A stretch of 64,000 nucleotides of DNA from contig NW_027361688.1 in assembly GCF_039654945.1 (NCBI RefSeq), positions 53,134,001 through 53,198,000 of the forward strand. Direction: 5' to 3'. The stretch is from Dendrobates tinctorius. Its lineage: Eukaryota. The notes beneath the pieces were generated by a model that made no database searches, was not told the DNA's origin, and saw only the letters and a program-made list of their open reading frames with translations. Below, piece after piece: positions 717 to 59,891 of the stretch (position 1 is its first letter; each line of letters opens with the position of its first letter). The translations under genes and the position numbers were made by a program.

Positions 717-3149
717 CTGATTTAGTTCATTAAAACAGCTGGAATTAGACATTAATGTTATCTCTTTGTCCATTTCGGTTATGTTTACTGATTTTGTTAA
801 TGTCAAATTTGGAATGTTTGCTGGAGGGAAGCAAGCTGAATAACATGGAGCAGCAGCCTCTGGTGGAGCCATCCGCACCTCCATGTACTTCAGGGTCCCA
901 TCTGTGTTCAGGTAAAGGGTTGGCTTGTACTGATCCATATAGGATGCAGAAAGGGATTTGTCAGTGAAGCAGAATCCACACCCAGAATCATAATTCTTTC
1001 TAAGGCACCGGACAAGTAATATAGAAAATGTGACCAGAAAAACTGCACTGATGGCCACAAGGGAGACGATAAGATACAGAGTCAGGTCTGGAGCAGATTT
1101 GGCATTTGTAAGAAAATCTTGAGATTTAGGACTTTCCTGAGCAACAGAGTCTAATATATTCACAATGATGGTGGCTGTAGTGGTCATAGAGGGTTCTCCA
1201 TGGTCACTGACCGCAATCACAAGTCGCTGTTCCGTGTTATCCGTCTCATGTAAACCTCGGAGAGTCCTGACCTCTCCTGTGTATTCAGAGATGTGGAATA
1301 AAGCAGGACTGGCAGACTGAACAAGACTATAGAGGAGCCAGGCATTGTGCCCAGAATCCACATCCACGGCAGACACCTTACTGACTAAATACCCAGCAGC
1401 TGCAGATCTCGGGATGGTCTCCTGAGCAATGGTCTCCACTGTGATCTCTGGGTATAAGATAGTGGGAGGGTTGTCATTTGTATCCAGAATAAATATGAAG
1501 ATGGAAACATTGGAGGATAATTTTGGAGATCCAGAATCATCCGCTCTCGCTGTGATCTGCAGAACCTGGAATTGTTCATAGTCAAAAGACCTTTGTGCAT
1601 AAATATTCCCGATGTCAGAGTTAATGTAGATGAATGAAGAGACGGGAGAACCGTGGATGTGGCTCTCAGCGATGGAGTAAATGAGGTTTGCATTAGCTCC
1701 CTCATCCGGATCTACAGCAGATACCGTACATAACAGTCTGCCGGCCTCATTGTTTTCTGGTGTGAAGGCATTGTACACATTGTGCAGAAATGCTGGAGGA
1801 TTATCATTAACATCAGAGATATTAAGGCTGATTGTAATCTGGCTGCTGAGAGACGGAGACCCCAGATCTGATGCCGTCAGTATAATGGTATATTGTGAGC
1901 GCTTCTCCCTGTCCAGATGTCCACTAGTGACCAGAGCGTAACGCTGTGACATGGGCTGGATTTTAAAGGGTAAATTTGGTGACAGATCAAGTCTAATTTC
2001 ACCATTTTTACCAGAATCCTTGTCTTTGACTGTGATGAATCCAACCACAGTTCCTATGGGGGCATTCTCAGGAACCGCAGTATTTTTCGATATAAAATTA
2101 ATTTCTGGAATGTTATCATTAACATCTTCAACTTCCACCTTAACCAGACATCTTCCTTCTAGTTTTGGTGATCCTTTGTCTGCCGCTTTAACAAAAAGCT
2201 CATAGGATTTTATTGTTTCATAATCCACCAGTTTTCTTAAATATATTTCACCAGTTAGTGAATTTATTTGAAATATTGATTTTGCAGAATCTAATGTTAG
2301 TTCATCGAAAGAATATAAAATATCACTATTTGCTCCTTCATCCAAATCTGTGGCATTTAATTTAAGTATGGTTGTATTTAGTGGACTGTCTTCTGTAATG
2401 CTGATTTTATATTTGGATGGATCAAACACAGGAGGATTATCATTGATATCTAACACAATGACGGTTATCTGTGTGGATCCGGATCTGGCTGGATCTCCCC
2501 CATCTATAGCAGTGAGAAGAAGCTTGTGCTCAGTTATCTCTTCTCTGTCTAGAGTTTTTTCCAGCAATAATTCTGCAATGAGCGTTCCATCATTGCGATT
2601 TGTTATAGATAATGAAAAAAAAGGATTTGGAGTCATTCTGTACTGATTAACCCCATTTATACCTACATCCAGGTCCTGTGCAGTTGGTAAAGAAAAATGA
2701 ACTCCAGGACCTGATAAAAGCTCAATAATTCTGATAACTTGGTCATTAGTCCTAAAAATTGGTGAATTATCATTAATATCCAGAACGTCTATCTCCAGAC
2801 TGTGCAGCTCCAGAGGATCCTCAGCCACAGCCTCTAAATGCAGCACACAGCTCAGGCTGGATCCACACAGGCTCTCCCTATCAATCCTCTCATCTACCAC
2901 CAGAGCTCCATTCTTCTGCTCTATAGAGAATAATCTGCTGTTTCCTTCTGATCCCAAACTCAGTCTCCTTCTCCTAATATCAGCCAGATTCACCCCCAGA
3001 TCCTGAGCCACGTTCCCCACAACAGTCCCCGGATGAGACTCCTCAGCCACAGAATAACGCAGCTGCCCAGAGACCCAGCCCCAGCTACAAAGGAGAAGGG
3101 AGAAAGCTACTTGCCATTTCCAAGCCTTCACAAAGCTCTGATTGTCCAT
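717..3149 (-). CDS. PCDHGC5-like: Clustered protocadherin gamma (C5-like) variable exon #1: SP, EC1-6, TM, variable cytoplasmic domain; expected to splice to constant exons outside the window
   Basis: ORF 708..3149. Cadherin motifs (PE, LDRE, DxD, DxNDN). N-terminus WQV..CSWGWVSGQLRYSV and cytoplasmic DGTLKYMEV match PCDHGC5. Donor CAG|GTGAGA at 717/716, phase 0. Confidence 0.93.
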
Positions 3150-3430
3150 ATCTTAAATCCTTCTTCTAAAATGTGTAGAGAATAATCATCATCCCATCAA
3201 TCCAAGTGTGTGAGCAGCAAAAATATAAATCCTAGGAACGGGAAAATCCTGGTTTTCCTGCATTGAAATCATCTGCAGGGCTCTCATCGGAGCAGCAGCT
3301 CTTCTTTGTGTGAGAGACGATGGGAGGGTGAATCACTGAGCCAGGGGGAGGAGAGCGCAGGGCTGATATGTGTAAGTCTAGACCAGTATAACAGCTTCAC
3401 TAGATGACAAGACTTCCCTCTCCTGGTCAA
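3150..3430 (-). promoter_or_regulatory. Promoter/5'UTR of exon #1 with CGCT box (~3354-3357) and CTCF-like motif (3413-3426)
   Basis: ~220 bp nearly identical upstream of all 7 ATGs; minus-strand CCAGGAGAGGGAAG. Confidence 0.65.
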
Positions 3431-12015: not shown

Positions 12016-12394
12016 ATATGTATAATACAATACTAACATTATGTGGAAACAGATTATCACATGGTGCCTTTTAGCTACATACTGTAAAATAACAAGAGAA
12101 TATTATATTTAGCTGTCAGTGCATGCTGAGATCTAGAGTATGGTACATGTGAGATGTCAAGCATGCAACATGGAGAATTTGCTTAGCAGAACATTCTCTT
12201 TGTATAACTATAAAATAGAAATAAGATCATTAAAGGTATTGATCACTCATATAAATGTTACTGTACATGGATCCAGTCACAAAATATCAGAAGAATAGAA
12301 AGCAAAGTACCAGTCGGGGTATTACCCAAGCATTTTCAGCAAACAGTATGGGATAGAAAACAGGGAAATAGCCACATAAACTTCAACATCTCAC

Positions 12395-14839
12395 CTGATT
12401 AGCTTCATTTAACCAATTTGAGTTAGAAGAAGGATTTGTATGTTCAACCATACCAGTTACACGTTGATCATCTAGTGATCGAGTCAAAGAAAAATTAGGA
12501 ATATCTGTAGTCGGAGGGAAACAAACTGGATAACAAGACCCCGGAGCCTCTGGTGGAGCCATCCGCACCTCCATGTACTTCAGGGTCCCATCAGTGTTCA
12601 GGTAAAGGGTTGGCTTGTACTGATCCATGTAGGATGTAGAAAGGGATTTGTCGGTGAAGCAGAATCCACACCCAGAATCATAATTCTTTCTGAGGCACCG
12701 GACAAGTAATATAGAAAATGTGACCAGAAAAACTGCACTGATGGCCACAAGGGAGACAATTAGATACAGAGTCAGGTCTGGAGCAGATTTGGCATTAGTA
12801 AGAAAATCTTGAGATTTAGGACTTTCCTGAGCAACAGAGTCTAATATATTCACAATGATGGTGGCTGTAGTGGTCATAGAGGGTTCTCCATGGTCACTGA
12901 TGGCAATCACAAGTCGCTGTTCGGTGTTATCCGTCTCATGTAAACCTCGGAGAGTCCTGACCTCTCCTGTGTATTCAGAGATGTGGAATAAAGCAGGACT
13001 GGCAGACTGAACAAGACTATAGAGGAGCCAGGCATTGTGCCCAGAATCCACATCCACGGCAGACACCTTACTGACTAAATACCCAGCAGCTGCAGATCTC
13101 GGGATGGTCTCCTGAGCAATGGTCTCCGCTGTGTTCTCCGGGTATAAGATAGTGGGAGGGTTGTCATTTGTATCCAGAAAAAATATGAAGACGGAAACAT
13201 TGGAGGATAATTTTGGAGATCCAGAATCTTCCACTCTCGCTGTGATCTGCAGAACCTGGAATTGTTCATAGTCAAAAGACCTTTGTGCATAAATATTCCC
13301 GGAGTCAGAGTTAATATAAACGAAGGAAGAGACGGGAGAACCGTGGATGTGGCTCTCAGTGATGGAGTAAATGAGGTTTGCATTAGCTCCCTCATCTGGA
13401 TCTACAGCAGATACCGTACATAACAGTCTGCCGGCCTCATTGTTTTCTGGTGTGAAGGCATTGTACACATTGTGCAGAAATGCTGGAGGATTATCATTAA
13501 CATCAGAGATATTAAGGCTGATTGTAATCTGACTGCTGAGAGACGGAGACCCCAGATCTGATGCCTTCAGTATAATGGTATATTGTGAGCGCTTCTCCCT
13601 GTCCAGATGTCCACTAGTGACCAGAGCGTAACGCTGTGACATGGGCTGGATTTTAAAAAGTAAATTTGGTGACACATCCATTTTGATTTCACCATTATTA
13701 CCAGAATCTCTATCTCTGACTGTGATGAATCCAACCACTGTTCCTATGGGGGCATTCTCAGGAACCGCAGTATTTTTAGATATAAAATTAATTTCTGGAT
13801 TGTTATCATTGACATCTTCTATTTCCACCTGAACAACACATCGCCCCTCTAATTTGGGAGAACCGTTGTCTGCTGCTGTGACAGACAATTCAAAAAGCTT
13901 TGATCCCTCAAAATCTACATCCCCTTTAATAAATATTTCTCCAGTCTGTGGGATTAAATTGAATATCTGTTTGGCCGAATTTAAAGTATGGTGATCAAAC
14001 GAATATAATATTTCTCCATTTGGTCCCTCATCTAAATCTGTAGCATTCAACTTTATAACAATTGTTTTTAACGGAATATTTTCGAATAATTTTATTTTAT
14101 AATGTGACTGATCAAACACTGGAGGATTATCATTAATGTCTAAAACACGAACAGTTATCAGCGTAGATCCTGATCTGGCTGGATCTCCCCCATCTATAGC
14201 AGTGAGAATAAGCTGGTGCTCTGCTTTCTCCTCTCTATCAAGACTTTTTTCCAACACTAATTCAGCAATGAGGGTCCCAGCCTTACGGCTTGTAACAGAC
14301 AATGAAAAATATGGATTTGGAATTAATGTATACCGAGTGACACCATTAAGCCCAACATCTAAATCCTGTGCAATCTCTAAAGGAAAATGCACACCTGGAG
14401 TTGTTAATAGCTCAGTAATATTAACTACTTGATCTTTGTTGGAAAATATTGGAGAATTATCATTAATATCCAGAACGTCTATCTCCAGACTGTGCAGCTC
14501 CAGAGGATCCTCAGCCACAGCCTCTAAATGCAGCACACAGCTCAGGCTGGATCCACACAGGCTCTCCCTATCAATCCTCTCATCTACCACCAGAGCTCCA
14601 TTCTTCTGCTCTATAGAGAATAATCTGCTGTTTCCTTCTGATCCCAAACTCAGTCTCCTTCTCCTGATATCAGCCAGATTCACCCCCAGATCCTGAGCCA
14701 CGTTCCCCACCACAGTCCCCGGATGAGACTCCTCAGCCACAGAATAACGCAGCTGCCCAGAGACCCAGCCCCAGCTACAAAGGAGAAGGGAGAAAGCTAC
14801 TTGCCATTTCCAAGCCTTCACAAAGCTCTGATTGTCCAT
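12395..14839 (-). CDS. PCDHGC5-like: Protocadherin gamma C5-like variable exon #2
   Basis: ORF 12383..14839, same architecture; donor CAG|GTGAGA at 12395/12394. Confidence 0.93.
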
Positions 14840-15120
14840 ATCTTAAATCCTTCTACTAAAATGTGTAGAGAATAATCATCATCCCATCAATCCAAGTGTG
14901 TGAGCAGCAAAAATATAAATCCTAGGAACGGGAAAATCCTGGTTTTCCTGCATTGAAATCATCCGCAGGGCTCTCATCGGAGCAGCAGCTCTTCTTTGTG
15001 TGAGAGACGATGGGAGGGTGAATCACTGAGCCAGGGGGAGGAGAGCGCAGGGCTGATATGACTGGGTCTAAATCAGTATAGAATCTTTACTGGATGACAA
15101 GACTGCCCTCTCCTGGTCAA
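14840..15120 (-). promoter_or_regulatory. Promoter/5'UTR of exon #2; CTCF-like motif 15103-15116
   Basis: Shared 220-bp block; minus-strand CCAGGAGAGGGCAG. Confidence 0.7.
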
Positions 15121-16087
15121 TGCTAATAAATACAGTTTGTAATCATTGCCTTGTAAAATGATTTGTTCATATTTTAGAGGTTTTTCTTTTTTTTTGTGAT
15201 TTTAGCAATTATTTTATAAAAGTGGGTACACCATTATCTGCAACAACTCTCACAGTCAAACAATAAAATACGTAGAAAAAAGTAAAAATTCTTGAAAACG
15301 AAAACATAAACCTTCCATAGAAAATGGTAATACATAATACCATATTTTATTTCCAGTTGTATATTAGTTATAAACAGTGCTCAGATTTGCTGAAACTGAA
15401 TATTTAGTAAATGGTCATGAGTGGAAGAGAGTATGCACTGATTGAGCCTTTAATCTTGGAAAGTGATTAAAGAGTTCATTTCAGAATGGAAATATTAAAA
15501 GGAGAGTTATAAACAAAAAAAATGATTTTCATTTTAGGAACTTAACCACCCTTTCGCCCAGAAATAAAGAAAAACCGACACCAAATAATATCGGATTGTA
15601 AGTTCACTGTTTGGATTAGTATTACTTGGTAAGTAACTCCAAATGCATCACATATATGAAACATTTTCCATTTAGACGCATTGTCAGATCACCTTCCATA
15701 ATAATATTTTGTCATACTGTATAATAAACTAGGGCGCACACAGGTATATAGATGATTTCTCTACCACATGGTAAATACGGTATCTTCATTACTGTAATCA
15801 AAATAGATTGTCATGTGCAAAAAGACATAACATTTTAGAAGTATGAGGGCTTTTACAATGTAGTCAGGTAGGAACTAAGGCAAATATTCCTGAGAAGCCT
15901 CAAAGAGTCGTGGGCTCACAGACAGGAAAGGTCGTGAGCCCAAAAACTAAGGTTTTAGTCTAACTTCGAGCACCAGTGTTTTTTTCTCCTTAATGTAAAG
16001 TGAAAGGTTAATCCAGCAGCAATTAAAAGTTACAAATTTGCTTTTATTTTTAAAAACAGAAATTCCGTTCTTGCATTGAATGTTTTT

Positions 16088-18405
16088 TTCGTATACATTT
16101 TTTTATTGAATAAATTTTTCGCAATAACAAAATATAACAACGAAAAAAGAAAAAAACGTTATATTCACTACAAATCTAATGCAGGTTCAGTATTCTGTAA
16201 AATGATGACATCACAGATATCATTTTCCATTGTTTCCATACAGAAAATTAAAGGATGTCTCAAACACAGAAGCAATAAAGCTAACAAAGCAGTGCATAAT
16301 TTCCTTTCTCAGAACCGTATAAAAACAAAAAAGAAAGATAAGGAGGAGGGGATGGGGGTGTAGGGGAAACTCATCCCACCTGCCTCTAAAGACCAAATCA
16401 CACACTCAGTATGACTCACCCCTCTTCAGCCGATATCCAACCCTATTTGGCCGGGGCAGCTTTAGTTCTCTAATCGAATAACTCCCAAATCATTTTTAAG
16501 GTTTTCTGTTAAGTACCATCTCGTTGAGGAGAAAGGTTCAACTATCTTTTGTCTCTCTTCAGCATTACAAAATTTACCAATAAATTGTTTCCATTTTAAT
16601 AAAAATTTCCCTGCTTTTGTCTCTTTTCTTCATAAGTGCATCTCATTGCTCTACCACCATAAAGTGATGCAATTGGGCCATCAAGTCAGATAACAAAGTG
16701 GTAGAAGGACTAAGCCAGTGCTTGAGGATCAACTTTCTAGCTAAGATTAGAATGGTATGCAAAAGTTTTGGAGGGCCCCCGTATCCACAACCCCCACCTC
16801 CCCAAATCTTCCCAGGAGTGAGATCGCCAATGTTAACGTCAGCGGTGTTATGTTACTCCACAATTTGCCTAACAAACTCGAAATTGATACCCAGTATGAG
16901 GCAATAGATTTACATGACCATAATCCATGCATCAGGTCCGATCTAGGAAGCTGACTCCTGGGGCATGCAACAAGATTATCAGAGCTATGATCCAATCTAT
17001 GAATATTAAAAGCGTATATAGCTCCATCCATAATTTTGAATTGAGTCTCCCTCCAAGACTCATTAATTATGTGTTTCCGGAAAAGAAACCAACCATTTCC
17101 TGATCCTGGAAAGTGCCTCAACATTATCCAAATGTAGATTCCAATATTTTTAAAAAGTATCTGGGTAAGGACTCAACAAATCCGGATTCATTATAGAGTT
17201 GATTGTGGAGATCGAAGGGTTCCCCATAGGATGCTGGAGTAACTCATCCAGGACGTTGCGATTCGCTTCACATCTGACATCCTGTAAATTTGTCATGATC
17301 GAAAGCCTAATCTGTAGGTATTGAAAACAATGTGAGGATTTCAGTGGATGCTTTTCAAGCAATTCAGAGCACGTCAACCATCTAAGTTCTGACAGTGGAG
17401 GAGGTGAGAGACATTAGAAATATTTTTCTGTCACCAGGTAATGAATAGTTTGTTCTCCATACCTTGAGGGAATTCGGGGTTTGCCCATAGTTTTAGATAT
17501 TTAGAGATTCTATGAGGGAGGTTATATTTCTTCCTCACCGCCTTCCATGTTGAAATCGTATCTCTGAATAAAGCTGATTTTTTAAAATAAGGAGGGAGAG
17601 AGGAGAGATGAGAGTGAAAAATTGCAGCTATATCAAATACCCGCTTGGGAAGGGGATATGATTTCAGGAAGAATCACCGCCAATCTGTCCGCCATTATTT
17701 TTGAGATTAGTTTAATATCTGTGTTGATTAACAAAATAGGTCCATAAGAGGACGGGTGCGTAGGGTCTTTACCAGGCTTCAAGATTAGTTTGAAATTTGC
17801 CCTATTGGCTGAGGGGAACAAGGGATCGCCATTTAGAATTTTATTAGTCAATTGTTCCATGATTGGTATGATCTCCAGGTGAGAAGTTTAAAAAATTCGG
17901 CAATATAGCTGTCGGGTCTGGGGGCCTTATAGTTTTTTGATTTATTAATAACAGAGATTATCTCCTCTCTGGAGATTGGTTTATTAAGAAACAATTTTTG
18001 CTCCTTTGAGAACAATGGCATGGCTACCTTATACAGTAGTGTATGATAGGTCATGTTTGGGGTATTGGGCTCACTGTGAAGTGCTCCATAGTATGATCCA
18101 AGGATATTGTTGATCATCAGGGGGTCAGATTGGATTGTTCCTGAAGGATCTTTTAGCTGGTAAATCTTTTGTTGTGGTCTGATCCCCATGGTCAGATTAG
18201 CCAACACCCTACCGGCTTTGTTTCCAAGTCTATAAAAAAAAATCTCTCTTTGAGATAAGAACAATTTCTCCCTCATCTCCCCCTGGTGGCTTAATTCTGC
18301 CACCAATGCTCCTTGTTTGTTGTAGATGGATCCGTAAGAAAGGATGTATAAGCCAATATGAGCTCTGCCTTTAACTCCCTGTATCGTTTCAAAATGCGCT
18401 TCCTG
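16088..18405 (-). mobile_element. Decayed L1/Tx1 LINE, 5'-truncated with an internal RT deletion
   Basis: ORF2 remnants (GNKAGRVLANL, LILKPGKDP...YGPILLINTDIK); 17-bp TSD TTGCATTGAATGTTTTT at 16071-16087 and 18406-18422. Confidence 0.85.
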
Positions 18406-18852
18406 TTGCATTGAATGTTTTTATAAAATTAGTTCACTCCTATGGTATCATCCCCTCTGATGTGTTTCGTGCTGCTAAGACCACATAATCATAGGTAGGG
18501 AGGCAATGTTTTCTGCTAGACCGATGTAGAATTAATCAATTAGTAAAAAAATGAAGCAGAGTGCGGTAATTTTTCTCCTAGTAGCTAAATAATATAAACT
18601 TCAGCAGACAATGTAAAACAATCAAAATTCTCAGACACGATTGGCAAATGTCTAGACTTATCAGCCATCCAAACCCTGGAATTACACCATCTCTACCTTT
18701 GCACCCATTCTAGTTATTATACATTTCACCGCAGTAATGTACATTTTTGTTGACTTTACCTTACACATTTAGCTTCTTCGAAAGGCGCTGCTCTTAAATT
18801 TTAATGAGTATTACATTTACTAGAGGTTATTGGCCTATTTTGTCCATGTCAC

Positions 18853-19874
18853 TGGATCACCCGCCAGGGCAGTGGGGTACTCGGTACTGGGCCGGTATCT
18901 CAGAGGGAAGTGTCACAGTAGCAGTGACCCAGTCCGTGGCCCTGGGCATCCATGTAAAAGGGGTTGAGCATTGCTGATTAAAGTTTATAAGTGGATGATA
19001 GGTGATGCCACCTGTGGTGATCGGCAATGAAGGGGTTAAGCCGACGATGCAGGCAGCTCCTCTGGGACAGATGGTATAAGGCAGCAAGTTGTAATAGCTC
19101 CTCACAGGTGGAGCTGTGGTCCCAGGGCAGTGGTAATAGGTGTTGAGGAAGAGGGTGTAGTGTCTGGCGCAGAGATGTAGCAGTGCTGGAGGGTTTGCAG
19201 GAAGAAGGCAATGACACAACAGGGTGCACTTTCCGTTGCCTTTACTGTGCTTTGTAAGTGCAGTCCAGGGTCCAGATTACAGATGGAACAGAGGCTGGTC
19301 AGCTTGGAAGCAACTTAGGAATCTCTCTATGCAGATGGGTTGTGTAGTCTCCTTTCTAGCGCTTTCTGGGGTACTTGTAGTACTGTGTTACACTGAAGTT
19401 CCACTTGCTTATTCTCTTTTAGAACTCCCTCGTATGGCAGACAGCTGTAGACTCCTTCTGGCTCACATGTTGCTGTTGTGCCTCTGAGTCTTATGTGGGA
19501 ACAGAGCATTTACAGCTTCCTATTCCTCTGGTTTCTGCTGCAGGAACATCAGTATCCATACAACCTTGGAGACCTGACTCCAGACCATGCGCTACAGCTA
19601 GAAGTGAGCCTGAACTCTGCTCAATCCTCCAGCTCGTCTCCTCACATCCACACACTTTTCCCTCCTCACACGAACTAATTTCCCCTTACTGGCCCCCAGA
19701 GAGCAGCTCTTCCCCCAGTTTTGGTGCAGAGCTCCCTCTGCTGGCCTGGAGTGGGAACTGTGCTGTGTGTTGTATTTAACTGATAGAGACCTTTCATTGC
19801 TTCCAGGCATGACATCACACTCCCTAGGAGGAAGGTAATGCCACTGTGGCGACCATACTCCTGGGGGCGCCACA
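18853..19874 (-). mobile_element. Probable solo LTR (Gypsy-type)
   Basis: Minus strand TGTGGCGCCCC...GGGTGATCCA; degenerate 4-bp TSD (TCAC/TAAC here, TATC/TAAC in the duplicate). Confidence 0.55.
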
Positions 19875-20202
19875 TAACCTCAGGCACTGACTGAGTTTAT
19901 CCACTTAAGCATTGCCTACAAGTGTAAGTACTTTAAGGCTAAATAATTATACTGTAGTTTCTCATGATTTATGTTACTAGGGTTTACGTATCAAAATAGT
20001 TTAAAAGAAAATCCCACATTTTTCCTGATAGCAACCAGTGAGAGTCCCGTTTTCTTTTTTTTTTTTTTTTTTTTTTTTTACACTTGTGGTAAAATGCAAA
20101 CTGTTCTGTAATTGGTTTCTATGGGCAACACTGGATTGTTTTTCTTTTACTCAGGTTTGATTAATTTGCCATTGTGCATATAGACAGCAGGACATATTAA
20201 TT

Positions 20203-20675
20203 TATTTTTCACTTTGTAAGATGCACTTTTTTCAAAATTTGGGAGAAAAATGGGGATGCATCTTAGAAAGTGTACATGCCTTACCGATACCGTAGGTGTA
20301 GGCCACAAGCTGGGATAAGGTGGTGTCTGGATGTCTCCGGGTGCCCGGCGGTTGCTGGCAGGTGCTGCAGGTTTCTCTGGTGCCCAGAGGTGCTGCATTA
20401 TTATCCGGCACTGCCCGGGGCTCTGCCAATATTTTGTGACAGGCCAGAGCCCAGGCACTTCCACGGTTCCAGCTCTGAGATCTCATCTCTCGAGAGCTTG
20501 GTCCCGAGATCACCATCTGCACATGCACCGCCCAAGGCGGCGGCCATATTCCTGGAGGCCACTGCACATGGAACTGTGGAAGTGCTCTGGCCTGTCGCAA
20601 AATGTCAGCAGAGCCCCGGGCAGCTCCGGACACCCATGCAGCACCGCTGGGCACCGGAGACACCCGCAGCACTTT
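20203..20675. mobile_element. pogo/Tc1-mariner-like MITE remnant with GC-rich internal inverted repeat (duplicate at ~29425-29895)
   Basis: TTTTTC(A/G)CTTTGTAAGATGCAC terminus-like sequence; inverted arms ~20360-20450 and ~20584-20671. Confidence 0.45.
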
Positions 20676-21682
20676 ACAAATCTACAGGTTGGGACATAGC
20701 TATTCAACCTTGATTGATACCGCTGCAATATATGGGCACTATGCATATATAAACTGTTTTGCTTTTGGTTGATATCTATTGGTAGCTTGAGCCATTATCA
20801 TAATTAACCTCTGCTATGGTGTTTTTACCACTACTGGTTTTGTGTTCTTGCTCACTGTTCCCTTTTTTCTTACCTAGTTGGGAGACTCCTTTGGAAATTG
20901 TATTTTAAACGTTATAAATAAATATTCAAATTTTTTATTTTATGTTTGCCTATGCCGCTTTATCCCCTGTTTCACTAGGGTTGGCGTATGAATTTATGGT
21001 TTTTACTGGTGTAGACATTTTGTTAGCATGACATCTAGATGGTTATCTTTCTTCACATAAAATCCTGAAGGTTATCTTGTAAATAATGCTGAGATTTATT
21101 ATATTCACAATTACAGTAAATGATTGAACACTATCTTATTAGACAGTGATATAGTCATCAGTTAAGTTGATTTCTCTGCATTTGCACATTATAAAATTAA
21201 TTACGTGATTTTGCTCCAATATACTGTAAGGTTGTAGAGCTCAACAAAGTTGGGAGCGCCCATATACTTACATCTAAGTCCTATGTGGGAGTTTTGTACT
21301 CTCCAGTTGCACACTCCCTATTTCCAAGGTTGAAAATGAGGAAGACTACATTGAGAAGACAATATATACTGTATCAGAGCCGCTCAATTCCAACTTGTAA
21401 ACTTTATGTAGACATAAATTGTCACATGCTGCCTCATATCTATCTATACCACAATTAGCATTATATTTACTGGTTTGTACTTGCAGTGATTTATGGTAAA
21501 AGTGAAATATAAATGACATAATGATAACCAGATCATAAGACTATTGAAGAATCCTGAAAATATTGAGGTATTATGAAGCCAAATACTTAAACATTATAAC
21601 AAAACTTAATATGTGCCGTCAACTAAGTGTATGAGATCACAATAAAAACTGTGGAATAAAGAAAAAAGGCTCAATATCTCAC

Positions 21683-24118: not shown

Positions 24119-24400
24119 ATCTTAAATCCTTCTTCTAAAATGTGTAGAGAATAATCATCATCCCATCAATCCAAGTGTGTGAGCAGCAAAAATATAAATC
24201 CTAGGAACGGGAAAATCCTGGTTTTCCTGCATTGAAATCATCCGCAGGGCTCTCATCGGAGCAGCAGCTCTTCTTTGTGTGAGAGACGATGGGAGGGTGA
24301 ATCACTGAGCCAGGGGGAGGAGAGCGCAGGGCTGATATGACTGGGTCTAAATCAGTATAGAATCTTTACTGGATGACAAGACTGCCCTCTCCTGGTCAAT
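24119..24400 (-). promoter_or_regulatory. Promoter/5'UTR of exon #3; CTCF-like motif 24382-24395
   Basis: Nearly identical to the exon #2 promoter, including the distal part; CCAGGAGAGGGCAG. Confidence 0.7.
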
Positions 24401-27684: not shown

Positions 27685-28121
27685 TTGCATTGAATGTTTT
27701 CATAAAATTAGTTCACTCCTATGGTATCATCCCCTCTGATGTGTTTCCACATAATCATAGGTAGGGAGGCAATGTTTTCTGCTAGACAGATGTAGAATTA
27801 ATCAATTAGTAAAAAAATGAAGCAGAGTGCGGTAATTTTTCTTCTAGTAGCTAAATAATATAAACTTCAGCAGACAACAATGTAAAACAATCAAAAATAT
27901 CAGACACGATTGGCAAATGTCTAGACTTATCAGCCATCCAAACCCTGGAATTACTCCATCTCTACCTTTGCACCCATTCTAGTTATTATACATTTCACCG
28001 CAGTAATGTACATTTTTGCTGACTTTACCTTACACATTTAGCTTCTTCGAAAGGCGCTGCTCTTAAATTTTAATGAGTATTACATTTACTAGAGGTTATT
28101 GGCCTATTTTGTCCATGTATC

Positions 28122-38424: not shown

Positions 38425-40860
38425 CTGAGTGGCATCATTATACAATTCTGAGTTTGAAGAAGGTTTTGACTCCATAAATGGTTCAGTTAATTGAGGATTG
38501 TTAAAGGTTTTGCTTAAGGTAAAACCTGGAATATCTGCAGGAGGGAAGCAAGCTGGGTAACAAGACCCCGGAGCCTCTGGTGGAGCCATCCGCACCTCCA
38601 TGTACTTCAGTGTCCCATCTGTGTTCAGGTAAAGGGTTGGTTTGTACTGATCCATATAGGATGTAGAAAGGGATTTATCAGTAAAGCAGAATCCACACAC
38701 AGAATCATAATTCTTTCTAAGGCACTGGACAAGTAATATAGAAAATGTGACCAGAAAAACTGCACTGATGGCCACAAGGGAGACGATAAGATACAGAGTC
38801 AGGTCTGGAGCAGATTTGGCATTTGTAAGAAAGTCTTGAGATTTAGGACTTTCCTGAGCAACAGTGTCTAATATATTCACAATGATGGTGGCTGTAGTGG
38901 TCATAGAGGGTTCTCCATGGTCACTGACGGCAATCACAAGTCGCTGTTCCGTGTTATCCGTCTCATGTAAACCTCGGAGAGTCCTGACCTCTCCTGTGTA
39001 TTCAGAGATGTGGAATAAAGCAGGACTGGCAGACTGAACAAGGCTATAGAGGAGCCAGGCATTGTGCCCAGAATCCACATCCACGGCAGACACCTTACTG
39101 ACTAAATACCCAGCAGCTGCAGATCTCGGGATGGTCTCCTGAGCAATGGTCTCCGCTGTGTTCTCCGGGTATAAGATCGTGGGAGGGTTGTCATTTGTAT
39201 CCAGAATAAATATGAAGACGGAAACATTGGAGGATAATTTTGGAGATCCAGAATCTTCCACTCTCGCTGTGATCTGCAGAACCTGGAATTGTTCATAGTC
39301 AAAAGACCTTTGTGCATAAATATTCCCGGTATCCGAATCAATGTAGACGAATGAAGAGATGGGAGAACCGTGGATGTGGCTCTCAGCGATGGAGTAAATG
39401 AGGTTTGCATTAGCTCCCTCATCCGGATCTACAGCAGATACCGTACATAACAGTCTGCCGGCCTCATTGTTTTCTGGTGTGAAGGGATTGTACACATTGT
39501 GCAGAAATGCTGGAGGATTATCATTAACATCAGAGATATTAAGGCTGATTGTAATCTGGCTGCTGAGAGACGGAGACCCCAGATCTGATGCCGTCAGTAT
39601 AATGGTATATTGTGAGCGCTTCTCCCTGTCCAGATGTCCACTAGTGACCAGAGTGTAACGCTGTGACATGCGCTGGATTTTAAAAGGTAAATCTGGTGAC
39701 AATTTCAGCCTAATTTCACCATTATTACCAGAATCCTTATCTTTGACTGTGATGAATCCAACCACAGTTCCTATGGGGGCATTCTCAGGAACCTCATTAG
39801 TCTTGGAGGTGAAAATAATTTCAGGGGTGTTATCATTTACATCCTTTACCTCAATCTGGATAACACAATGCCCCTGTAATTTAGGGGAACCTTTGTCTGT
39901 TGCTTTTATATACAATTCATAAAACTTAGATTCTTCAAAATCCAATGTATCTGAAGCTATTATTTCATTAGTTTTTGAATTTATTTGAAATATCCTTTTT
40001 GCAGAATCCAAAGTATGGTGATCAAAGGAATATGAGATGTCGCCATTTGCACCTTCATCTCGATCTGTTGCATTTAATTGTATGATAACGGAGTTTAATG
40101 GAATATTTTCTAAAACGCTGATCCTATAACTGGGCTGATGAAACACAGGAGCATTGTCATTAATGTCTAACACGTTTACAGTTATCTGTGTGGACCCTGA
40201 TTTCGGAGGATCTCCCCCATCTATAGCAGTGAGAATAAGCTTATGTTCAGCCTTTTCCTCCCTATCAAGGCTCTTTTCTAACACAAGCTCAGTAATGAGG
40301 GTCCCATCCATACGGTTTTTAGTAAACAGGGAAAAATAGGGATTGGGGTTTAATTTATATTGATTTATACCATTTTTACCCATATCTAAATCTTTTGCTG
40401 TTTCTATTTGAAATCTTTCTCCAGGAATAGATTCTGTAATATTTATAATCGTATTGATGCTAGAAAATATTGGAGAATTATCATTAATATCCAGAACGTC
40501 TATCTCCAGACTGTGCAGCTCCAGAGGATCCTCAGCCACAGCCTCTAAATGCAGCACACAGCTCAGGCTGGATCCACACAGGCTCTCCCTATCAATCCTC
40601 TCATCTACCACCAGAGCTCCATTCTTCTGCTCTATAGAGAATAATCTGCTGTTTCCTTCTGATCCCAAACTCAGTCTCCTTCTCCTGATATCAGCCAGAT
40701 TCACCCCCAGATCCTGAGCCACGTTCCCCACCACAGTCCCCGGATGAGACTCCTCAGCCACAGAATAATGCAGCTGCCCAGAGACCCAGCCCCAGCTACA
40801 AAGGAGAAGGGAGAAAGCTACTTGCCATTTCCAAGCCTTCACAAAGCTCTGATTGTCCAT
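38425..40860 (-). CDS. PCDHGC5-like: Protocadherin gamma C5-like variable exon #5
   Basis: ORF 38389..40860; donor CAG|GTGAGG at 38425/38424. Confidence 0.93.
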
Positions 40861-49293: not shown

Positions 49294-51714
49294 CTGATTT
49301 ACATCATTACACCAGTCTGAGTTGGATAATGGTTCACTTAATTGTGGAATATTGTCAGTTGTACTCAGTGTAAAACCTGGAATATCTGCTGGAGGGAAAC
49401 AAACCGGATAACAAGATCCTGGAGCTTCTGGTGGAGCCATCCGCACCTCCATGTACTTCAGGGTCCCATCTTTGTTCAGGTAAAGGGTTGGTTTGTACTG
49501 ATCCATGTAGGATGTAGAAAGGGATTTGTCGGTGAAGCAGAATCCACACCCAGAATCATAATTCTTTCTGAGGCACCGGACAAGTAATATAGAAAATGTG
49601 ACCAGAAAAACTGCACTGATGGCCACAAGGGAGACAATAAGATACAGAGTCAGGTCTGGAGCAGATTTGGCATTTGTAAGAAAATCTTGAGATTTAGGAC
49701 TTTCCTGAGCAACAGAGTCTAATATATTCACAATGATGGTGGCTGTAGTGGTCATAGAGGGTTCTCCATGGTCACTGACGGCAATCACAAGTCGCTGCTC
49801 CGTGTTATCCATCTCATGTAAACTTCGGAGAGTCCTGACCTCTCCTGTGTATTCAGAGATGTGGAATAAAGCAGGACTGGCAGACTGAACAAGGCTATAG
49901 AGGAGCCAGGCATTGTGCCCAGAATCCACATCCACGGCAGACACCTTACTGACTAAATACCCAGCGGCTGCAGATCTCGGGATGGTCTCCTGAGCAATGG
50001 TCTCCGCTGTGTTCTCCGGGTATAAGATAGTGGGAGGGTTGTCATTTGTATCTAGAATAAATATGAAGATGGAAACATTGGCGGATAATTTTGGAGATCC
50101 AGAATCTTCCACACTCGCTGTGATCTGCAGAACCTGGAATTGTTCATAGTCAAAAGACCTTTGTGCGTAAATATTCCCGGTGTCGGAGTTAATGTAGATG
50201 AATGAAGACACGGGAGAACCGTGGATGTGGCTCTCAGCGATGGAGTAAATGAGGTTTGCATTAGCTCCCTCATCCGGATCTACAGCAGATACCGTACATA
50301 ACAGTCTGCCGGCCTCATTGTTTTCTGGTGTGAAGGCATTGTACACATTGTGCAGAAATGCTGGAGGATTATCATTAACATCAGAGATATTAAGGCTGAT
50401 TGTAATCTGGCTGCTGAGAGACGGAGACCCCAGATCTGATGCCGTCAGTATAACGGTATATTGTGAGCGCTTCTCCCTGTCCAGATGTCCACTAGTGACC
50501 AGAGCGTAACGCTGTGACATGGGCTGGCATGTGAAAGGTAAATCTGGGGAAGCTGTGAGCTTTGTTTCTCCATTTTTCCCAGTGTCTTTGTCTCTTACAG
50601 TAATAAAACCTACTACGGTTCCTATGGGGGCATTCTCAGGGATTTCCTTATTTTTGAATACAAAAATAATTTCTGGAATATTATCATTTAAGTCTTCTAT
50701 TTCAATCTGGACACGACATCTGCCCTCAAGCTTTGGGGATCCTTTATCTATAGCTTTTATTAATAATTCATAAATAGTAGCAATTTCAAAATCCACTGGA
50801 CCTTCAATAAATACTTCACCTGTAATTGGGTTTATATCGAATATTTCCTTGGCCGAGTTTGAATTGCGTTGGTCTAAGGAATATGTGAATTCACTGTTGA
50901 CTCCCTCATCTGCATCTGTAGCTTTTAGTTTTATTATCACGGTTTTCAAAGGCACATTCTCTGGTATGTTCACCTTATAACGTGGCTGATCGAATACTGG
51001 AGCATTATCATTGATATCTAACACTATGACTGTTAGCTGAGTGGATCCGGATCTGGCTGGATCTCCCCCGTCTATGGCAGTGAGAATAAGCTTGTGCTCT
51101 GATTTCTCTTCTCTGTCTAGAATTTTTTCTACCACTAATTCAGCAATAAAATTTCCAGAATCTTTTGTTACAGATAAAGAAAAATATGGATTTGGGTTTA
51201 GTCTGTACTGACTGATACCATTAACACCTACATCAAAATCCTGTGCATTTTCCAAAGGGAACTGCACACCAGGGTTTGTAAATTGTTCGGTAATTTTTAT
51301 AATCTGATTAATGTTTGAAAAAAATGGTGAATTATCATTAATATCCAGAATGTCTATCTCCAGACTGTGCAGCTCCAGAGGATCCTCAGCCACAGCCTCT
51401 AAATGCAGCACACAGCTCAGGCTGGATCCACACAGGCTCTCCCTATCAATCCTCTCATCTACCACCAGAGCTCCATTCTTCTGCTCTATAGAGAATAATC
51501 TGCTGTTTCCTTCTGACCCCAAACTCAGTCTCCTTCTCCTGATATCAGCCAGATTCACCCCCAGATCCTGAGCCACGTTCCCCACAACAGTCCCTGGATG
51601 AGACTCCTCAGCCACAGAATAACGCAGCTGCCCAGAGACCCAGCCCCAGCTACAAAGGAGAAGGGAGAAAGCTACTTGCCATTTCCAAGCCTTCACAAAG
51701 CTCTGATTGTCCAT
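49294..51714 (-). CDS. PCDHGC5-like: Protocadherin gamma C5-like variable exon #6
   Basis: ORF 49282..51714; donor CAG|GTGAGA at 49294/49293. Confidence 0.93.
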
Positions 51715-57184: not shown

Positions 57185-59617
57185 CTGATCAGGTTCATTA
57201 CACCAGCTGCCATCAGCAATACGTTCTGGCTCCCTGATTATATCTGTGAACTGAGTCTTAGATAAAGTAGAATGTGGGATGTCTGTTACAGCAGGGAAAC
57301 AAGCCGGGTAACAAGACCCCAGAGCCTCTGGTGGAGCCATCCGCACCTCCATGTACTTCAGGGTCCCATCTGTGTTTAGGTAAAGGGTTGGTTTGTACTG
57401 ATCCATATAGGATGTAGAACGGAATTTGTCAGTGAAGCAGAATCCACACCGAGAATCATAATTCTTTCGAAGGCAGCGGACAAGTAATATAGAAAATGTG
57501 ACCAGAAAAACTGCACTGATGGCCACAAGGGAGACAATAAGATACAGAGTCAGGTCTGGAGCAGATTTGGCATTTGTAAGAAAGTCTTGAGATTTAGGAT
57601 TTTCCTGAGCAACAGTGTCTAATATATTCACAATGATGGTGGCTGTAGTGGTCATAGAGGGTTCTCCATGGTCACTGACGGCAATCACAAGTCGCTGTTC
57701 TGTGTTATCCATCTCATGTAAACCTCGGAGAGTCCTGACCTCTCCTGTGTATTCAGAGATGTGGAATAAAGCAGGACTGGCAGACTGAACAAGACTATAG
57801 AGGAGCCAGGCATTGTGCCCAGAATCCACATCCACGGCAGACACCTTACTGACTAAATACCCAGCGGCTGCAGATCTCGGGATGGTCTCCTGAGCAATGG
57901 TCTCCAATGTGATCTCTGGGTATAAGATAGCAGGAGGGTTGTCATTTGTATCCAGAATAAATATGAAGACGGAAACATTGGAGGATAATTTTGGAGATCC
58001 AGAATCTTCCACTCTCGCTGTGATCTGCAGAACCTGGAATTGTTCATAGTCAAAAGACCTTTGTGCATAAATATTCCCGGTGTCGGAGTTAATGTAGACG
58101 AATGAAGAGACGGGAGAACCATGGATGTGGCTCTCAGTGATGGAGTAAATGAGGTTTGCATTAGCTCCCTCATCCGGATCTACAGCAGATACCGTACATA
58201 ACAGTCTGCCGGCCTCATTGTTTTCTGGTGTGAAGGCATTGTACACATTGTGCAGAAATGCTGGAGGATTATCATTAACATCAGAGATATTAAGGCTGAT
58301 TGTAATCTGGCTGCTGAGAGACGGAGACCCCAGATCTGATGCCGTCAGTATAACGGTATATTGTGAGCGCTTCTCCCTGTCCAGATGTCCACTAGTGACC
58401 AGAGCGTAACGCTGTGACATGGGCTGGCATAGAAACGGTAAATCTGGTGATACAATCAATTGTACTTCACCATTTTTACCAGAATCCTTATCTCTGACTG
58501 TGATGAATCCAACCACAGTTCCTATGGGGGCATTCTCAGGAACTGCATTATGTTTAAATATAAATGTAATTTCTGGACTGTTATCATTGACATCTTCTAT
58601 TTCCACTTGAACAATACAATGTCCTTCTTGTTTAGGTGACCCTTTATCCACAGCTATGACAAACAGTTCAAAGAATTTTACAGCTTCATAATCCAGAATT
58701 CCTTTATTAAATATTTCCCCTGTGGTAGGATTTAATTCAAATATTTTCTCTGCAGCTTCTAAAGTTCGATGATCAAATGAAAAGATAAATTCACTGTTTA
58801 CACCTTCATCCAGATCACTAGCATTGAGCTTTAACACTTTTGTTTTTAAAGGTATATTTTCTCGAACACTAACCTTATATAAAGGCTGATCAAACAATGG
58901 GGAATTGTCATTGATATCTAATATAAGGACAGTAATCTGAGTGGATCCGGATCTGGCTGGTTCTCCTCCATCAATAGCGGTGAGAAGAAGCTTGTGCTCA
59001 GCTATCTCTTCTCTGTCTAGAATTTTTTCCAGCACTAATTCAGCAATGAGCGATCCATCATTGCGCTTTTTGGTGAACAATGAAAAATATGGATTTGATT
59101 TAATTGTATACTGACTGACACTATTAATCCCTACGTCTAAATCCTGTGCATTCTCTAAAGGAAAGTGTTTACCAGGACTTGTTAGTAACTCTGTCACCTT
59201 TATAATTTGATCACCACTTGGAAATATTGGAGAATTATCATTAATATCCAGAACGTCTATCTCCAGACTGTGCAGCTCCAGAGGATCCTCAGCCACAGCC
59301 TCTAAATGCAGCACACAGCTCAGGCTGGATCCACACAGGCTCTCCCTATCAATCCTCTCATCTACCACCAGAGCTCCATTCTTCTGCTCTATAGAGAATA
59401 ATCTGCTGTTTCCTTCTGATCCCAAACTCAGTCTCCTTCTCCTGATATCAGCCAGATTCACCCCCAGATCCTGAGCCACGTTCCCCACCACAGTCCCCGG
59501 ATGAGACTCCTCAGCCACAGAATAACGCAGCTGCCCAGAGACCCAGCCCCAGCTACAAAGGAGAAGGGAGAAAGCTACTTGCCATTTCCAAGCCTTCACA
59601 AAGCTATGATTGTCCAT
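57185..59617 (-). CDS. PCDHGC5-like: Protocadherin gamma C5-like variable exon #7
   Basis: ORF 57170..59617; donor CAG|GTGAGA at 57185/57184. Confidence 0.93.
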
Positions 59618-59891
59618 ATCTTAAATCCTTCTTCTAAAATGTGTAGAGAATAATCATCATCCCATCAATCCAAGTGTGTGAGCAGCAAAAATATAAATCC
59701 TAGGAACGGGAAAATCCTGGTTTTCCTGCATTGAAATCATCCGCAGGGCTCTCATCGGAGCAGCAGCTCTTCTTTGTGTGAGAGACGATGGGAGGGTGAA
59801 TCACTGAGCCAGGGGGAGGAGAGCGCAGGGCTGATATGAGGAGATCTCCTAACAATGAATCAGAATGACATGTCTGCCCTCTACTGGACAA
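59618..59891 (-). promoter_or_regulatory. Promoter/5'UTR of exon #7; CTCF-like motif 59874-59887
   Basis: Shared block; CCAGTAGAGGGCAG. Confidence 0.72.

What the first reader, a model, noticed from the sequence alone, without database searches (positions are those of the whole stretch)
717..59890. Recognition-receptor array built as an invariant scaffold with a variable EC2-EC3 cassette
Seen: all seven exons are near-identical in nucleotide sequence, including synonymous sites, from ~220 bp upstream of the ATG to the EC1/EC2 boundary (DINDNSP). They are near-identical again from mid-EC4 (PMSQRY) to MAPPEA. The ~800 bp in between is strongly divergent (about 1960-2760, 13650-14450, 22935-23730, 32510-33305, 39675-40470, 50528-51325, 58428-59228). 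Known: clustered Pcdhs bind in trans through antiparallel EC1-EC4 and EC2-EC3 contacts, and domain-restricted gene conversion has been described in Pcdh clusters. Inference: with one shared EC1, specificity is confined to EC2-EC3 plus the first strands of EC4. This gives a cassette-like neuronal barcode repertoire maintained by concerted evolution with very sharp edges.
Basis: partly seen in the sequence, partly recalled or inferred. Interest (0 to 1): 0.75.

Follow-up and report, generated by a model that had tools for sequence, protein, structure and literature searches.

The report
Frog protocadherin array, homogenised flanks
Seven tandem frog protocadherin-gamma exons keep their promoter, first domain and membrane-proximal half almost identical by ongoing gene conversion, while the EC2-EC3 recognition segment stays old and different; this is a very clean new example of a pattern already known in fish and mammals.

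Summary
Seven clustered-protocadherin variable exons lie on the minus strand. They are 97-99% identical in DNA from about 220 bp upstream of the ATG to the end of EC1 (dS 0.03-0.04), and again from mid-EC4 to the juxtamembrane MAPPEA (dS 0.02-0.10). EC2, EC3 and the first half of EC4 have dS 0.8-1.5. The edges are less than 20 bp wide.

One correction: the V3, V4 and V5 cassettes are 94-98% alike, so the window holds five cassette lineages, not seven.

- With 77 homologues from 14 other frog species, EC1 and EC4b-TM trees group by species and the cassette tree groups by orthologue (AU p 1e-3 to 1e-6).
- GC3 is 0.47-0.53 in the homogenised blocks and 0.27 in the cassette.
- 60% of informative site pairs in the 3' block fail the four-gamete test.
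- A Pristimantis contig shows the same pattern in DNA.

V3 is an unequal-crossover chimera that switches exactly at the EC1/EC2 edge. Spliced contigs join V6 to a gamma-type constant exon.

Region-restricted gene conversion that spares EC2-EC3 is already published for teleost and mammalian clusters. This is a new frog member of a known kind. That EC2-EC3 alone carries binding specificity is inferred, not tested.

The parts
717..3149 (-). V1 variable exon (ATG 3149, last exon base 717, donor CAG|GTGAG)
   Evidence: ORF. Pfam finds Cadherin_2, five Cadherin stretches and Cadherin_C_2. Donor.
12395..14839 (-). V2 variable exon
21683..24118 (-). V3 variable exon. It is a chimera: V2-like upstream and through EC1, V4-like from the cassette onward.
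31259..33694 (-). V4 variable exon
38425..40860 (-). V5 variable exon
49294..51714 (-). V6 variable exon. The donor at 49294 is used: contigs continue into a gamma-type constant exon.
   Evidence: loose ends at 49294 in runs X5 and X13. Their reverse complement continues in frame as QAQPNADWR. Donor position.
57185..59617 (-). V7 variable exon
2764..3370 (-). Homogenised block A of V1: 221 bp of 5' non-coding DNA, the signal peptide and EC1. The same block lies at 14454-15060, 23733-24339, 33309-33915, 40475-41081, 51329-51935 and 59232-59838.
   Evidence: 97-99% nucleotide identity, dS 0.027, edges, GC3 0.53
1948..2763 (-). Variable cassette of V1 (EC2, EC3 and the first ~52 aa of EC4). Its orthologue is Phyllobates terribilis isoform X43.
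13638..14453 (-). Variable cassette of V2 (orthologue Ranitomeya imitator P0009)
22923..23732 (-). Variable cassette of V3, 98% identical to that of V4
32499..33308 (-). Variable cassette of V4 (orthologues Ranitomeya P0026 and P0034)
39665..40474 (-). Variable cassette of V5, 94-95% identical to V3 and V4 (orthologue R. variabilis P0022)
50516..51328 (-). Variable cassette of V6 (orthologues Ranitomeya P0017 and P0035). A second frog species, organism B, differs at 15 of 876 bases.
58416..59231 (-). Variable cassette of V7 (orthologue R. variabilis P0033)
855..1947 (-). Homogenised block C of V1: second half of EC4, EC5, EC6, TM and juxtamembrane, ending at MAPPEA. The same block lies at 12545-13637, 21830-22922, 31406-32498, 38572-39664, 49423-50515 and 57323-58415.
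   Evidence: 97-98% identity, dS 0.065, reticulate site patterns and GC3 0.47
3413..3426 (-). CTCF-consensus-like motif CCAGKAGAGGGMAG, 270-277 bp upstream of the ATG on the gene strand. Copies also lie at 15103-15116, 24382-24395, 33951-33964, 41117-41130, 51971-51984 and 59874-59887.
   Evidence: 7 matches with at most 1 mismatch, against 0.22 expected by chance; one copy before every exon; the core is conserved in Pristimantis.
3350..3362 (-). CGCT-box element CCCTGCGCTCTCC, 213 bp upstream of the ATG, at the 5' end of a ~90 bp core conserved across paralogues and in Pristimantis
12383..21119 (-). First copy of a ~9.3 kb tandem duplication (V2 exon plus the intergenic DNA upstream of it)
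   Evidence: Self-BLAST: 12383-19378 matches 21671-28647 at 95%, and 19406-21119 matches 28641-30340 at 95.6%
21117..30340 (-). Second copy of the tandem duplication (V3 exon plus upstream intergenic DNA). In addition, 21117-24340 matches 30693-33916 (V4) at 98%.
23720..23727 (-). Switch point of the V3 chimera, at the EC1/EC2 edge
   Evidence: At sites where V2 and V4 differ, V3 carries the V2 state at nearly all sites from 25619 down to 23727. It carries the V4 state from 23720 through the cassette, tail and 3' flank to about 21270; inside block C the states are mixed.

Best explanation
What it is. The window holds part of a frog protocadherin-gamma cluster, from a dendrobatid. Its nearest annotated relatives are Phyllobates and Ranitomeya 'protocadherin gamma-C5-like' isoforms. 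Each of the seven exons has its own promoter, encodes a whole ectodomain plus TM, and is spliced to shared constant exons.

How it evolves. Two blocks of every exon are kept nearly identical within the species by repeated non-allelic gene conversion and occasional unequal crossing-over among the tandem copies. Block A is the core promoter, 5'UTR, signal peptide and EC1. Block C is the second half of EC4 through the juxtamembrane region. The ~810 bp between them (EC2, EC3 and the first half of EC4), the C-terminal tail and the intergenic DNA do not take part, and they keep lineages that are older than the hyloid frog radiation.

Why the edges stay sharp (inferred). Cassettes that are 25-30% diverged no longer support heteroduplex extension. 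Conversion that overwrote a cassette would also remove an isoform and be selected against.

Functional consequence (inferred from published mammalian structures). All isoforms share one EC1, one EC4b, and one EC5-EC6 cis-dimerisation surface. The EC1:EC4 contact then supplies non-selective affinity, cis pairing is promiscuous, and self/non-self discrimination can only come from the EC2:EC3 contact.

What is shown and what is inferred. Shown here: the identity profile, the dS contrast, the species-versus-orthologue tree conflict, the GC3 bias, the reticulate site patterns, the V3 chimera, and the use of the V6 splice donor. Inferred: the molecular cause of the edges and the binding consequences.
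For: - dS by domain: EC1 0.04, EC2 1.5, EC3 1.5, EC4a 0.84, EC4b 0.02, EC5 0.057, EC6 0.051, TM 0.105, tail 0.97.
- The 221 bp 5' non-coding block is 99-100% identical among copies.
- Trees: blocks A and C group by species and the cassette groups by orthologue. AU tests give p 1.75e-5, 1e-6 and 1e-3.
- Identity in block A is 99.2% within the window genome. Between species it falls from 97% to 77% with phylogenetic distance. In the cassette the best cross-species match is 80-94%, against about 69% between paralogues.
- Between the window and Pristimantis, dS is 0.25 in A and 0.27 in C. These blocks therefore evolve at a substantial synonymous rate between species but are homogenised within each species (Pe1-Pe2 dS 0.09 and 0.08).
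- GC3 is 0.53 in A and 0.47 in C, against 0.27 in the cassette and 0.26 in the tail.
- In block C, 153 of 253 pairs of informative sites fail the four-gamete test, and a PHI-like permutation gives p 0.004.
- In block C, V1-V4 dS (0.027) is lower than dS for the youngest duplicates V3-V4 (0.056). Exchange has therefore continued since that duplication.
- V3 is a V2/V4 chimera that switches at 23727-23720, and the intergenic DNA is duplicated at 95%.
- The same edges (after residue 130, at about 396-399, and at about 763-766) are seen in 10 or more hyloid species and in Pristimantis DNA.
- Far-upstream DNA of V1 is 66% identical to that of the cassette-related Pristimantis exon Pe1, whereas V6 upstream is 26% identical to it. 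Flanks and cassette therefore share one history.
- Spliced contigs join V6 to a constant exon.
- Literature: EC1/EC4 gives non-selective affinity and EC2/EC3 gives specificity (PMC5001838). The cis interface is EC5-EC6/EC6 and is promiscuous (PMC7811963).
Against: - No binding data exist for these proteins.
- Only protein sequences, not DNA, were available for most other species, so cross-species dS comes from one Pristimantis contig.
- The homologue set is the best 120 hits to V1 and is biased toward this subfamily. Evidence outside Hyloidea (Mixophyes, Rana) is thin.
- Part of the identity in the 5' block is purifying selection (91% identical to Pristimantis).
- The cassette is under average purifying selection (omega about 0.2). 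Diversifying selection was not demonstrated.
- GENECONV and GARD were not available, so individual conversion tracts were not delimited.
Confidence: 0.88

Rival explanations
1. Purifying selection alone: EC1 and EC4b-TM are identical because the protein, or an embedded regulatory element, tolerates no change.
For: dN is very low in A and C (0.003-0.02). The 5' non-coding core is conserved across species (91%).
Against: - Synonymous sites are homogenised as well (dS 0.02-0.1, against 0.8-1.5 in the cassette).
- The same synonymous sites differ between species (dS 0.25-0.27 to Pristimantis).
- A and C trees group by species with species-specific substitutions.
Confidence: 0.03
2. Very recent whole-exon duplications, followed by rapid divergence of EC2-EC3 under positive selection.
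For: Tandem duplication does occur here. V3/V4 and their 9.3 kb units are 95-98% alike.
Against: - Cassette dS is saturated (about 1-1.5) with omega about 0.2.
- Each cassette has its own orthologue in other dendrobatids and other hyloid families.
- Intergenic DNA between most copies cannot be aligned.
- Far-upstream DNA follows cassette orthology.
Confidence: 0.02
3. Assembly or polishing artefact: near-identical blocks produced when multi-mapped reads were collapsed or used to polish paralogues to one consensus.
For: Highly similar tandem repeats are prone to this. The best DNA runs may be the assembly's own source.
Against: - Copies retain 1-3% private and shared differences.
- Contigs from several independent studies branch exactly at the cassette edges.
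- The same architecture appears in independently assembled genomes of more than 10 species and in a Pristimantis contig.
Confidence: 0.02
4. Cassette import: the exons are young copies of one scaffold, and old EC2-EC3 segments were pasted into them by conversion from donors elsewhere in the cluster.
For: The mosaic itself fits this equally well. V3 shows that a cassette can come to lie behind a different upstream region.
Against: - The unique tail, the 3' flank and the far-upstream DNA are as old as the cassettes and follow their relationships (tail dS 0.9; V1 upstream 66% identical to Pe1 upstream).
- The blocks with raised GC3, the expected mark of repeated conversion, are the flanks and not the cassette.
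Confidence: 0.05

Closest known systems
Regional gene conversion in teleost protocadherin clusters (zebrafish, Noonan et al. 2004, Genome Res 14:354; fugu, Yu et al. 2007, PMC1852091)
   Same: - Tandem variable exons.
- A block with about 99% nucleotide identity, synonymous sites included, next to a diverged block, with a discrete boundary in EC4/EC5.
- Raised GC3 in the converted part.
- EC2-EC3 spared.
- Lineage-specific homogenisation.
   Different: In fugu and zebrafish only the 3' part (EC4/5 to the cytoplasmic stub) is homogenised, and EC1 is diverged. Zebrafish Pcdh2ab has dS 1.67 for EC1 and 0.01 for EC6 (PMC4978886, Table 2). Here a second block covering the promoter, 5'UTR and EC1 is homogenised just as strongly, so the variable part is an internal cassette.
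Mammalian protocadherin-alpha cluster
   Same: The pattern is two-sided. Mouse Pcdha1-12 has dS 0.31 for EC1, 2.08 for EC2, 2.15 for EC3 and 0.27 for EC5, with EC1 96% and EC5 98% identical in amino acids (PMC4978886, Tables 1 and 2). Each exon has a CSE/CTCF promoter site.
   Different: - The mouse contrast is much weaker (about 8-fold against about 70-fold here).
- In mouse, EC4 and EC6 are not homogenised (dS 1.71 and 1.35).
- The frog array is gamma-type by its constant exon and by NCBI naming.
- In the frogs the edges sit at the same residues in many species.
Xenopus tropicalis clustered protocadherins (Etlioglu et al. 2016, PMC4978886)
   Same: It is also a frog locus with large gamma clusters of lineage-specific duplicates. 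EC2 and EC3 were noted there as not subject to conversion, and CSE-like promoter motifs lie about 200 bp upstream of the ATG.
   Different: X. tropicalis was reported to have only low-level conversion, with highest/lowest dS ratios of 2-5. The neobatrachian subfamily here has a ratio of about 70 and near-identical EC1.
Affinity/specificity partition of the antiparallel EC1-4 trans dimer (Nicoludis et al. 2016, PMC5001838)
   Same: That work proposes that EC1/EC4 gives non-selective affinity and EC2/EC3 gives specificity. The frog array looks like that partition written into the genome.
   Different: It is a structural and biochemical result on human and mouse isoforms. Nothing of the kind was measured for the frog proteins.

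Membership tests
Clustered protocadherin (gamma-type) variable exons | One large exon encodes a signal peptide, six cadherin repeats, a TM segment and a short cytoplasmic stub | tested here: met
   Pfam finds Cadherin_2 (EC1), five Cadherin stretches and Cadherin_C_2 in 813-823 aa ORFs. The best solved relatives are Pcdh gamma-B4, gamma-A9 and alpha-7 ectodomains.
Clustered protocadherin (gamma-type) variable exons | Tandem array in one orientation, each exon with its own 5' splice donor joined to shared constant exons | tested here: met
   Seven exons lie on the minus strand 7-12 kb apart. All end in CAG|GTGAG. Contigs of runs X5 and X13 leave the genome at the V6 donor (49294) and continue in frame as QAQPNADWR. 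That this resembles the start of the mammalian gamma constant region is my recollection. Full-length homologues carry PF15974.
Clustered protocadherin (gamma-type) variable exons | Promoter conserved sequence element with a CGCT box about 200 bp upstream of the ATG, which is a CTCF site | tested here: inconclusive
   A CGCT-containing element lies at -213 inside a ~90 bp core conserved across paralogues and in Pristimantis. A CTCF-consensus-like motif lies at -270 to -277 before every exon, with 7 matches against 0.22 expected.
Clustered protocadherin (gamma-type) variable exons | Membership of the C-type subgroup (gamma-C5) | not tested
   This rests only on NCBI's automatic name 'gamma-C5-like' for the homologues. 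No tree with mammalian C-type isoforms was built.
Region-restricted concerted evolution by gene conversion (as described for Pcdh clusters) | Synonymous divergence is far lower in the homogenised region than in the rest of the same exon | tested here: met
   dS is 0.02-0.10 against 0.8-1.5.
Region-restricted concerted evolution by gene conversion (as described for Pcdh clusters) | Paralogues group by species in the homogenised region and by orthologue in the spared region | tested here: met
   Trees, AU tests, identity tables.
Region-restricted concerted evolution by gene conversion (as described for Pcdh clusters) | Raised third-position GC in converted regions | tested here: met
   GC3 is 0.53 and 0.47 against 0.27 and 0.26.
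Region-restricted concerted evolution by gene conversion (as described for Pcdh clusters) | Mosaic or reticulate variant sharing among copies (recombination signal) | tested here: met
   60% of informative site pairs in block C are incompatible by the four-gamete test, and a PHI-like permutation gives p 0.004. GENECONV and GARD were not available.
Homophilic recognition code carried by EC2-EC3 | Binding specificity follows EC2-EC3 and not EC1 or EC4 | not testable with these tools
   This needs cell-aggregation or biophysical assays. The only support is published mammalian work (PMC5001838) and the logical point that an invariant EC1 cannot discriminate.

The most novel reading that the evidence does not exclude
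A gamma-type protocadherin subfamily of neobatrachian frogs may have kept one fixed three-part exon architecture since before the hyloid radiation: a shared promoter-plus-EC1 block, a private EC2-EC3-EC4a cassette, and a shared EC4b-TM block. The conversion boundaries sit at the same codons in every species. On this reading the boundaries are actively maintained and not accidental. The family would then be a natural, many-times-replicated domain-swap experiment showing that EC2:EC3 alone is sufficient to encode protocadherin self-recognition. The homogenised promoter block would additionally equalise stochastic promoter choice among isoforms.
Probability: 0.35. Interest if true: 0.6.

Novelty: new member of a known kind. 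Interest (0 to 1): 0.42.

Why it matters
Clustered protocadherins give vertebrate neurons their individual surface identity. Which domains carry specificity, and how the gene clusters stay both diverse and mutually compatible, have been worked out mainly in mouse, human and teleosts.

This frog array is an unusually clean natural case. Evolution has held EC1, half of EC4, the cis-dimerisation domains and the core promoter in common, and has left only EC2-EC3 and the start of EC4 free to differ. The edges are the same across many frog species.

Three consequences follow:
- It independently supports the model in which EC1/EC4 supplies affinity and EC2/EC3 supplies specificity.
- It offers ready-made isoform sets for aggregation assays.
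- It shows that frogs are not uniformly low in protocadherin gene conversion, as might be concluded from Xenopus tropicalis.

It does not reveal a new mechanism.

Tried and rejected
- DNA of the closest annotated homologue (Phyllobates terribilis X43) could not be fetched, because no gene with exactly that product is on record. Cross-species dS therefore rests on one Pristimantis contig.
- Noonan et al. 2004 (PMC353213) and Wu 2005 (PMC1449604) are not held in the library. Their content is cited through papers that quote them.
- The runs laid on V6 are contigs, so they show neither the transcription start nor expression level. Whether the 221 bp homogenised upstream block is 5'UTR or promoter could not be settled.
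- Purifying selection alone, recent duplication with fast cassette divergence, assembly artefact and cassette import were each considered and rejected. The reasons are under the rival explanations.
- Other ORFs in the intergenic DNA gave only a reverse-transcriptase fragment and nothing related to the array.
- I did not fold the protein or map interface residues. The tools give no dimer coordinates, so that would not have tested specificity.

Full report
WHAT IS THERE

The window carries seven open reading frames of 810-823 aa on the minus strand, 7-12 kb apart. Each has a signal peptide, a Cadherin_2 domain (EC1), five further cadherin repeats, a TM segment and the Cadherin_C_2 stub. Each ends in CAG|GTGAG.

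The nearest database proteins are 'protocadherin gamma-C5-like' isoforms of dendrobatid and other hyloid frogs. The best hit is Phyllobates terribilis X43 at 94%. Cassette trees place the window species nearer to Ranitomeya than to Phyllobates.

Contigs from two public runs of the same organism leave the genome exactly at the predicted V6 donor (49294). They continue in frame as QAQPNADWR. I recognise this, from memory, as the start of the gamma constant region. These are therefore expressed, spliced variable exons of a gamma-type cluster.

CHECK OF THE OBSERVATION

An alignment of the seven exons with flanks shows the following:
- The intergenic DNA cannot be aligned.
- About 220-233 bp upstream of each ATG, identity jumps to 97-100% and stays there through EC1.
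- Within 20 bp after the DINDNSP codons it drops to 69-77%.
- At PMSQRY (mid-EC4) it returns to 97-98% and holds to MAPPEA.
- The C-terminal tail and the 3' flank are diverged again.

Nei-Gojobori dS by domain is 0.04 (EC1), 1.5 (EC2), 1.5 (EC3), 0.84 (first half of EC4), 0.02 (second half of EC4), 0.057 (EC5), 0.051 (EC6), 0.105 (TM and juxtamembrane) and 0.97 (tail).

One correction is needed. The cassettes of V3 and V4 are 98% identical and V5 is 94-95% identical to both. The window therefore holds five old cassette lineages, not seven.

IS IT CONCERTED EVOLUTION?

1. dS in EC1 and EC4b-EC6 is 15-70 times lower than in EC2-EC3. Protein-level constraint therefore cannot be the cause.

2. I cut 77 homologues from 14 other frog species into the same three regions.
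   - In the EC1 and EC4b-TM trees the seven window copies form one clade (SH-aLRT 88 and 90), and in nearly every other species the paralogues also group by species.
   - In the cassette tree each window copy sits with its orthologue from Phyllobates or Ranitomeya, inside orthogroups that span dendrobatids, hylids, leptodactylids, bufonids and brachycephaloids.
   - AU tests reject window monophyly for the cassette (p 1.75e-5). They reject the V1 cassette orthogroup as a clade in EC1 (p 1e-6) and in the 3' block (p 1e-3).

3. Identity in EC1 is 99.2% within the genome. Between species it declines with phylogenetic distance, from 97% to 77%. In the cassette the best cross-species match (80-94%) far exceeds paralogue identity (about 69%).

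4. A 20.5 kb Pristimantis contig with adjacent exons shows the same two-block profile in DNA.
   - Between the window and Pristimantis, dS is 0.25 in EC1 and 0.27 in EC4b-EC6.
   - Within each genome the corresponding values are 0.03-0.09.
   - These blocks therefore change at a substantial synonymous rate between species but are homogenised within each species.

5. GC3 is 0.53 and 0.47 in the two homogenised blocks, against 0.27 in the cassette and 0.26 in the tail. Yu et al. used the same signature for fugu (PMC1852091).

6. In the 3' block, 153 of 253 pairs of informative sites fail the four-gamete test, and neighbouring sites are more compatible than distant ones (permutation p 0.004).

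7. Also in the 3' block, V1-V4 dS (0.027) is lower than dS for the youngest duplicates V3-V4 (0.056). Exchange has therefore continued after that duplication.

UNEQUAL CROSSING-OVER

Self-BLAST finds a ~9.3 kb tandem duplication. V2 plus its upstream intergenic DNA matches V3 plus its upstream DNA at 95%. V3 plus 550 bp of its 3' flank matches V4 at 98%.

At sites where V2 and V4 differ, V3 carries the V2 state at nearly all sites upstream down to 23727. It carries the V4 state from 23720 through the cassette, tail and 3' flank, with mixed states inside block C. V3 is therefore a crossover product whose junction lies at the last bases of the homogenised EC1 block.

An earlier first-stage note on this genome (s1-366860) proposed the same idea, and I confirm it here. 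The homogenised blocks are thus also the substrate that creates new exons.

THE 5' BLOCK

The 221 bp before the ATG are 99-100% identical among copies. They are also 91% identical to the corresponding Pristimantis sequence, well above what dS 0.25 predicts. Purifying selection therefore acts here in addition to conversion.

The block begins with a CGCT-containing element at -213. This is where the protocadherin CSE is described (PMC4978886). Just outside the fully homogenised block, 270-277 bp upstream of every ATG and on the gene strand, lies CCAGKAGAGGGMAG. A scan with the CTCF consensus as I remember it gives 7 matches at one mismatch or fewer, against 0.22 expected by chance. Five of them are at promoters, and the V1 and V4 copies have two mismatches. 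Binding was not tested.

HOW GENERAL IS IT?

Within-species paralogue identity profiles for ten hyloid species have the same shape, and the edges fall at the same residues: after residue 130, at about 396-399, and at about 763-766. Mixophyes shows the same shape with less contrast, and only three Rana paralogues were available.

A few family members escape one block or the other. One orthogroup keeps its own 3' block. Another keeps its own EC1 but shares the 3' block.

COMPARISON WITH WHAT IS KNOWN

Region-restricted gene conversion that spares EC2-EC3 is a classical finding for protocadherin clusters:
- Zebrafish and mammals: Noonan et al. 2004, as quoted in PMC3966226, PMC1852091 and PMC4978886.
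- Fugu: about 99% identical 3' regions, a discrete boundary in EC4/EC5 and raised GC3 (PMC1852091).

Two-sided homogenisation is visible in published mouse alpha values: dS 0.31 for EC1, 2.08 for EC2, 2.15 for EC3 and 0.27 for EC5 (PMC4978886, Table 2). The same paper reports only low-level conversion in Xenopus tropicalis.

The frog array here combines alpha-like EC1 homogenisation with teleost-strength 3' homogenisation, in a gamma-type subfamily, and its edges are conserved across species. I found no paper describing this in neobatrachian frogs. It is a new member of a known kind, not a new mechanism.

FUNCTION (INFERRED)

Published structures assign non-selective hydrophobic affinity to EC1/EC4 and specificity to EC2/EC3 (PMC5001838). 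They assign promiscuous cis pairing to EC5-EC6 (PMC7811963).

With one EC1 shared by all isoforms, a mixed pair makes exactly the EC1:EC4 contacts that the two homodimers make. Discrimination can then arise only at EC2:EC3. The variable first half of EC4 can tune affinity but cannot discriminate through EC1.

Average omega in the cassette is about 0.2, and diversifying selection was not shown.

VERDICT

Novelty is modest.

Noticed in passing
window 19730-19744 and 28968-28982 (minus strand): Two further CTCF-consensus-like matches (CCAGCAGAGGGAGCT) lie in the intergenic DNA, one in each copy of the 9.3 kb tandem duplication, about 5 kb upstream of V2 and V3. They are not promoter-proximal.
   Followed up: no
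window 35625-36080 (+): An ORF fragment with a reverse-transcriptase domain (RVT_1, E 1.5e-15) lies between V4 and V5. It is probably a retroelement relic.
   Followed up: partly
window 44301-44843 and 53468-53931: Tandem repeat arrays of 43-127 bp units (44.3-44.8 kb) and of 130-175 bp GC-rich units with an inverted copy (53.3-54.1 kb) lie in the intergenic DNA.
   Followed up: no
window 62001-64000: GC content rises to 0.52 with strong negative GC skew, unlike the rest of the window (0.36-0.48). I did not examine it.
   Followed up: no
L001 17046-19544 (+): The third variable exon on the Pristimantis contig belongs to a different subfamily. It is 55-75% identical to its two neighbours throughout and takes no part in their homogenisation, so exchange is confined to subfamily members even between adjacent exons.
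   Followed up: partly
trees (proteins P0053, P0054, P0060, P0063-P0065, P0068; and P0089, P0090, P0093-P0095): Two orthogroups of the frog family escape part of the homogenisation. One keeps an orthologue-specific 3' block. The other keeps its own EC1 and cassette but shares the species-specific 3' block.
   Followed up: partly
window 49100-52100, run X15 (organism B): A second, closely related frog species holds the V6 cassette with 15 differences in 876 bases. Its contigs branch at the same cassette edges.
   Followed up: partly
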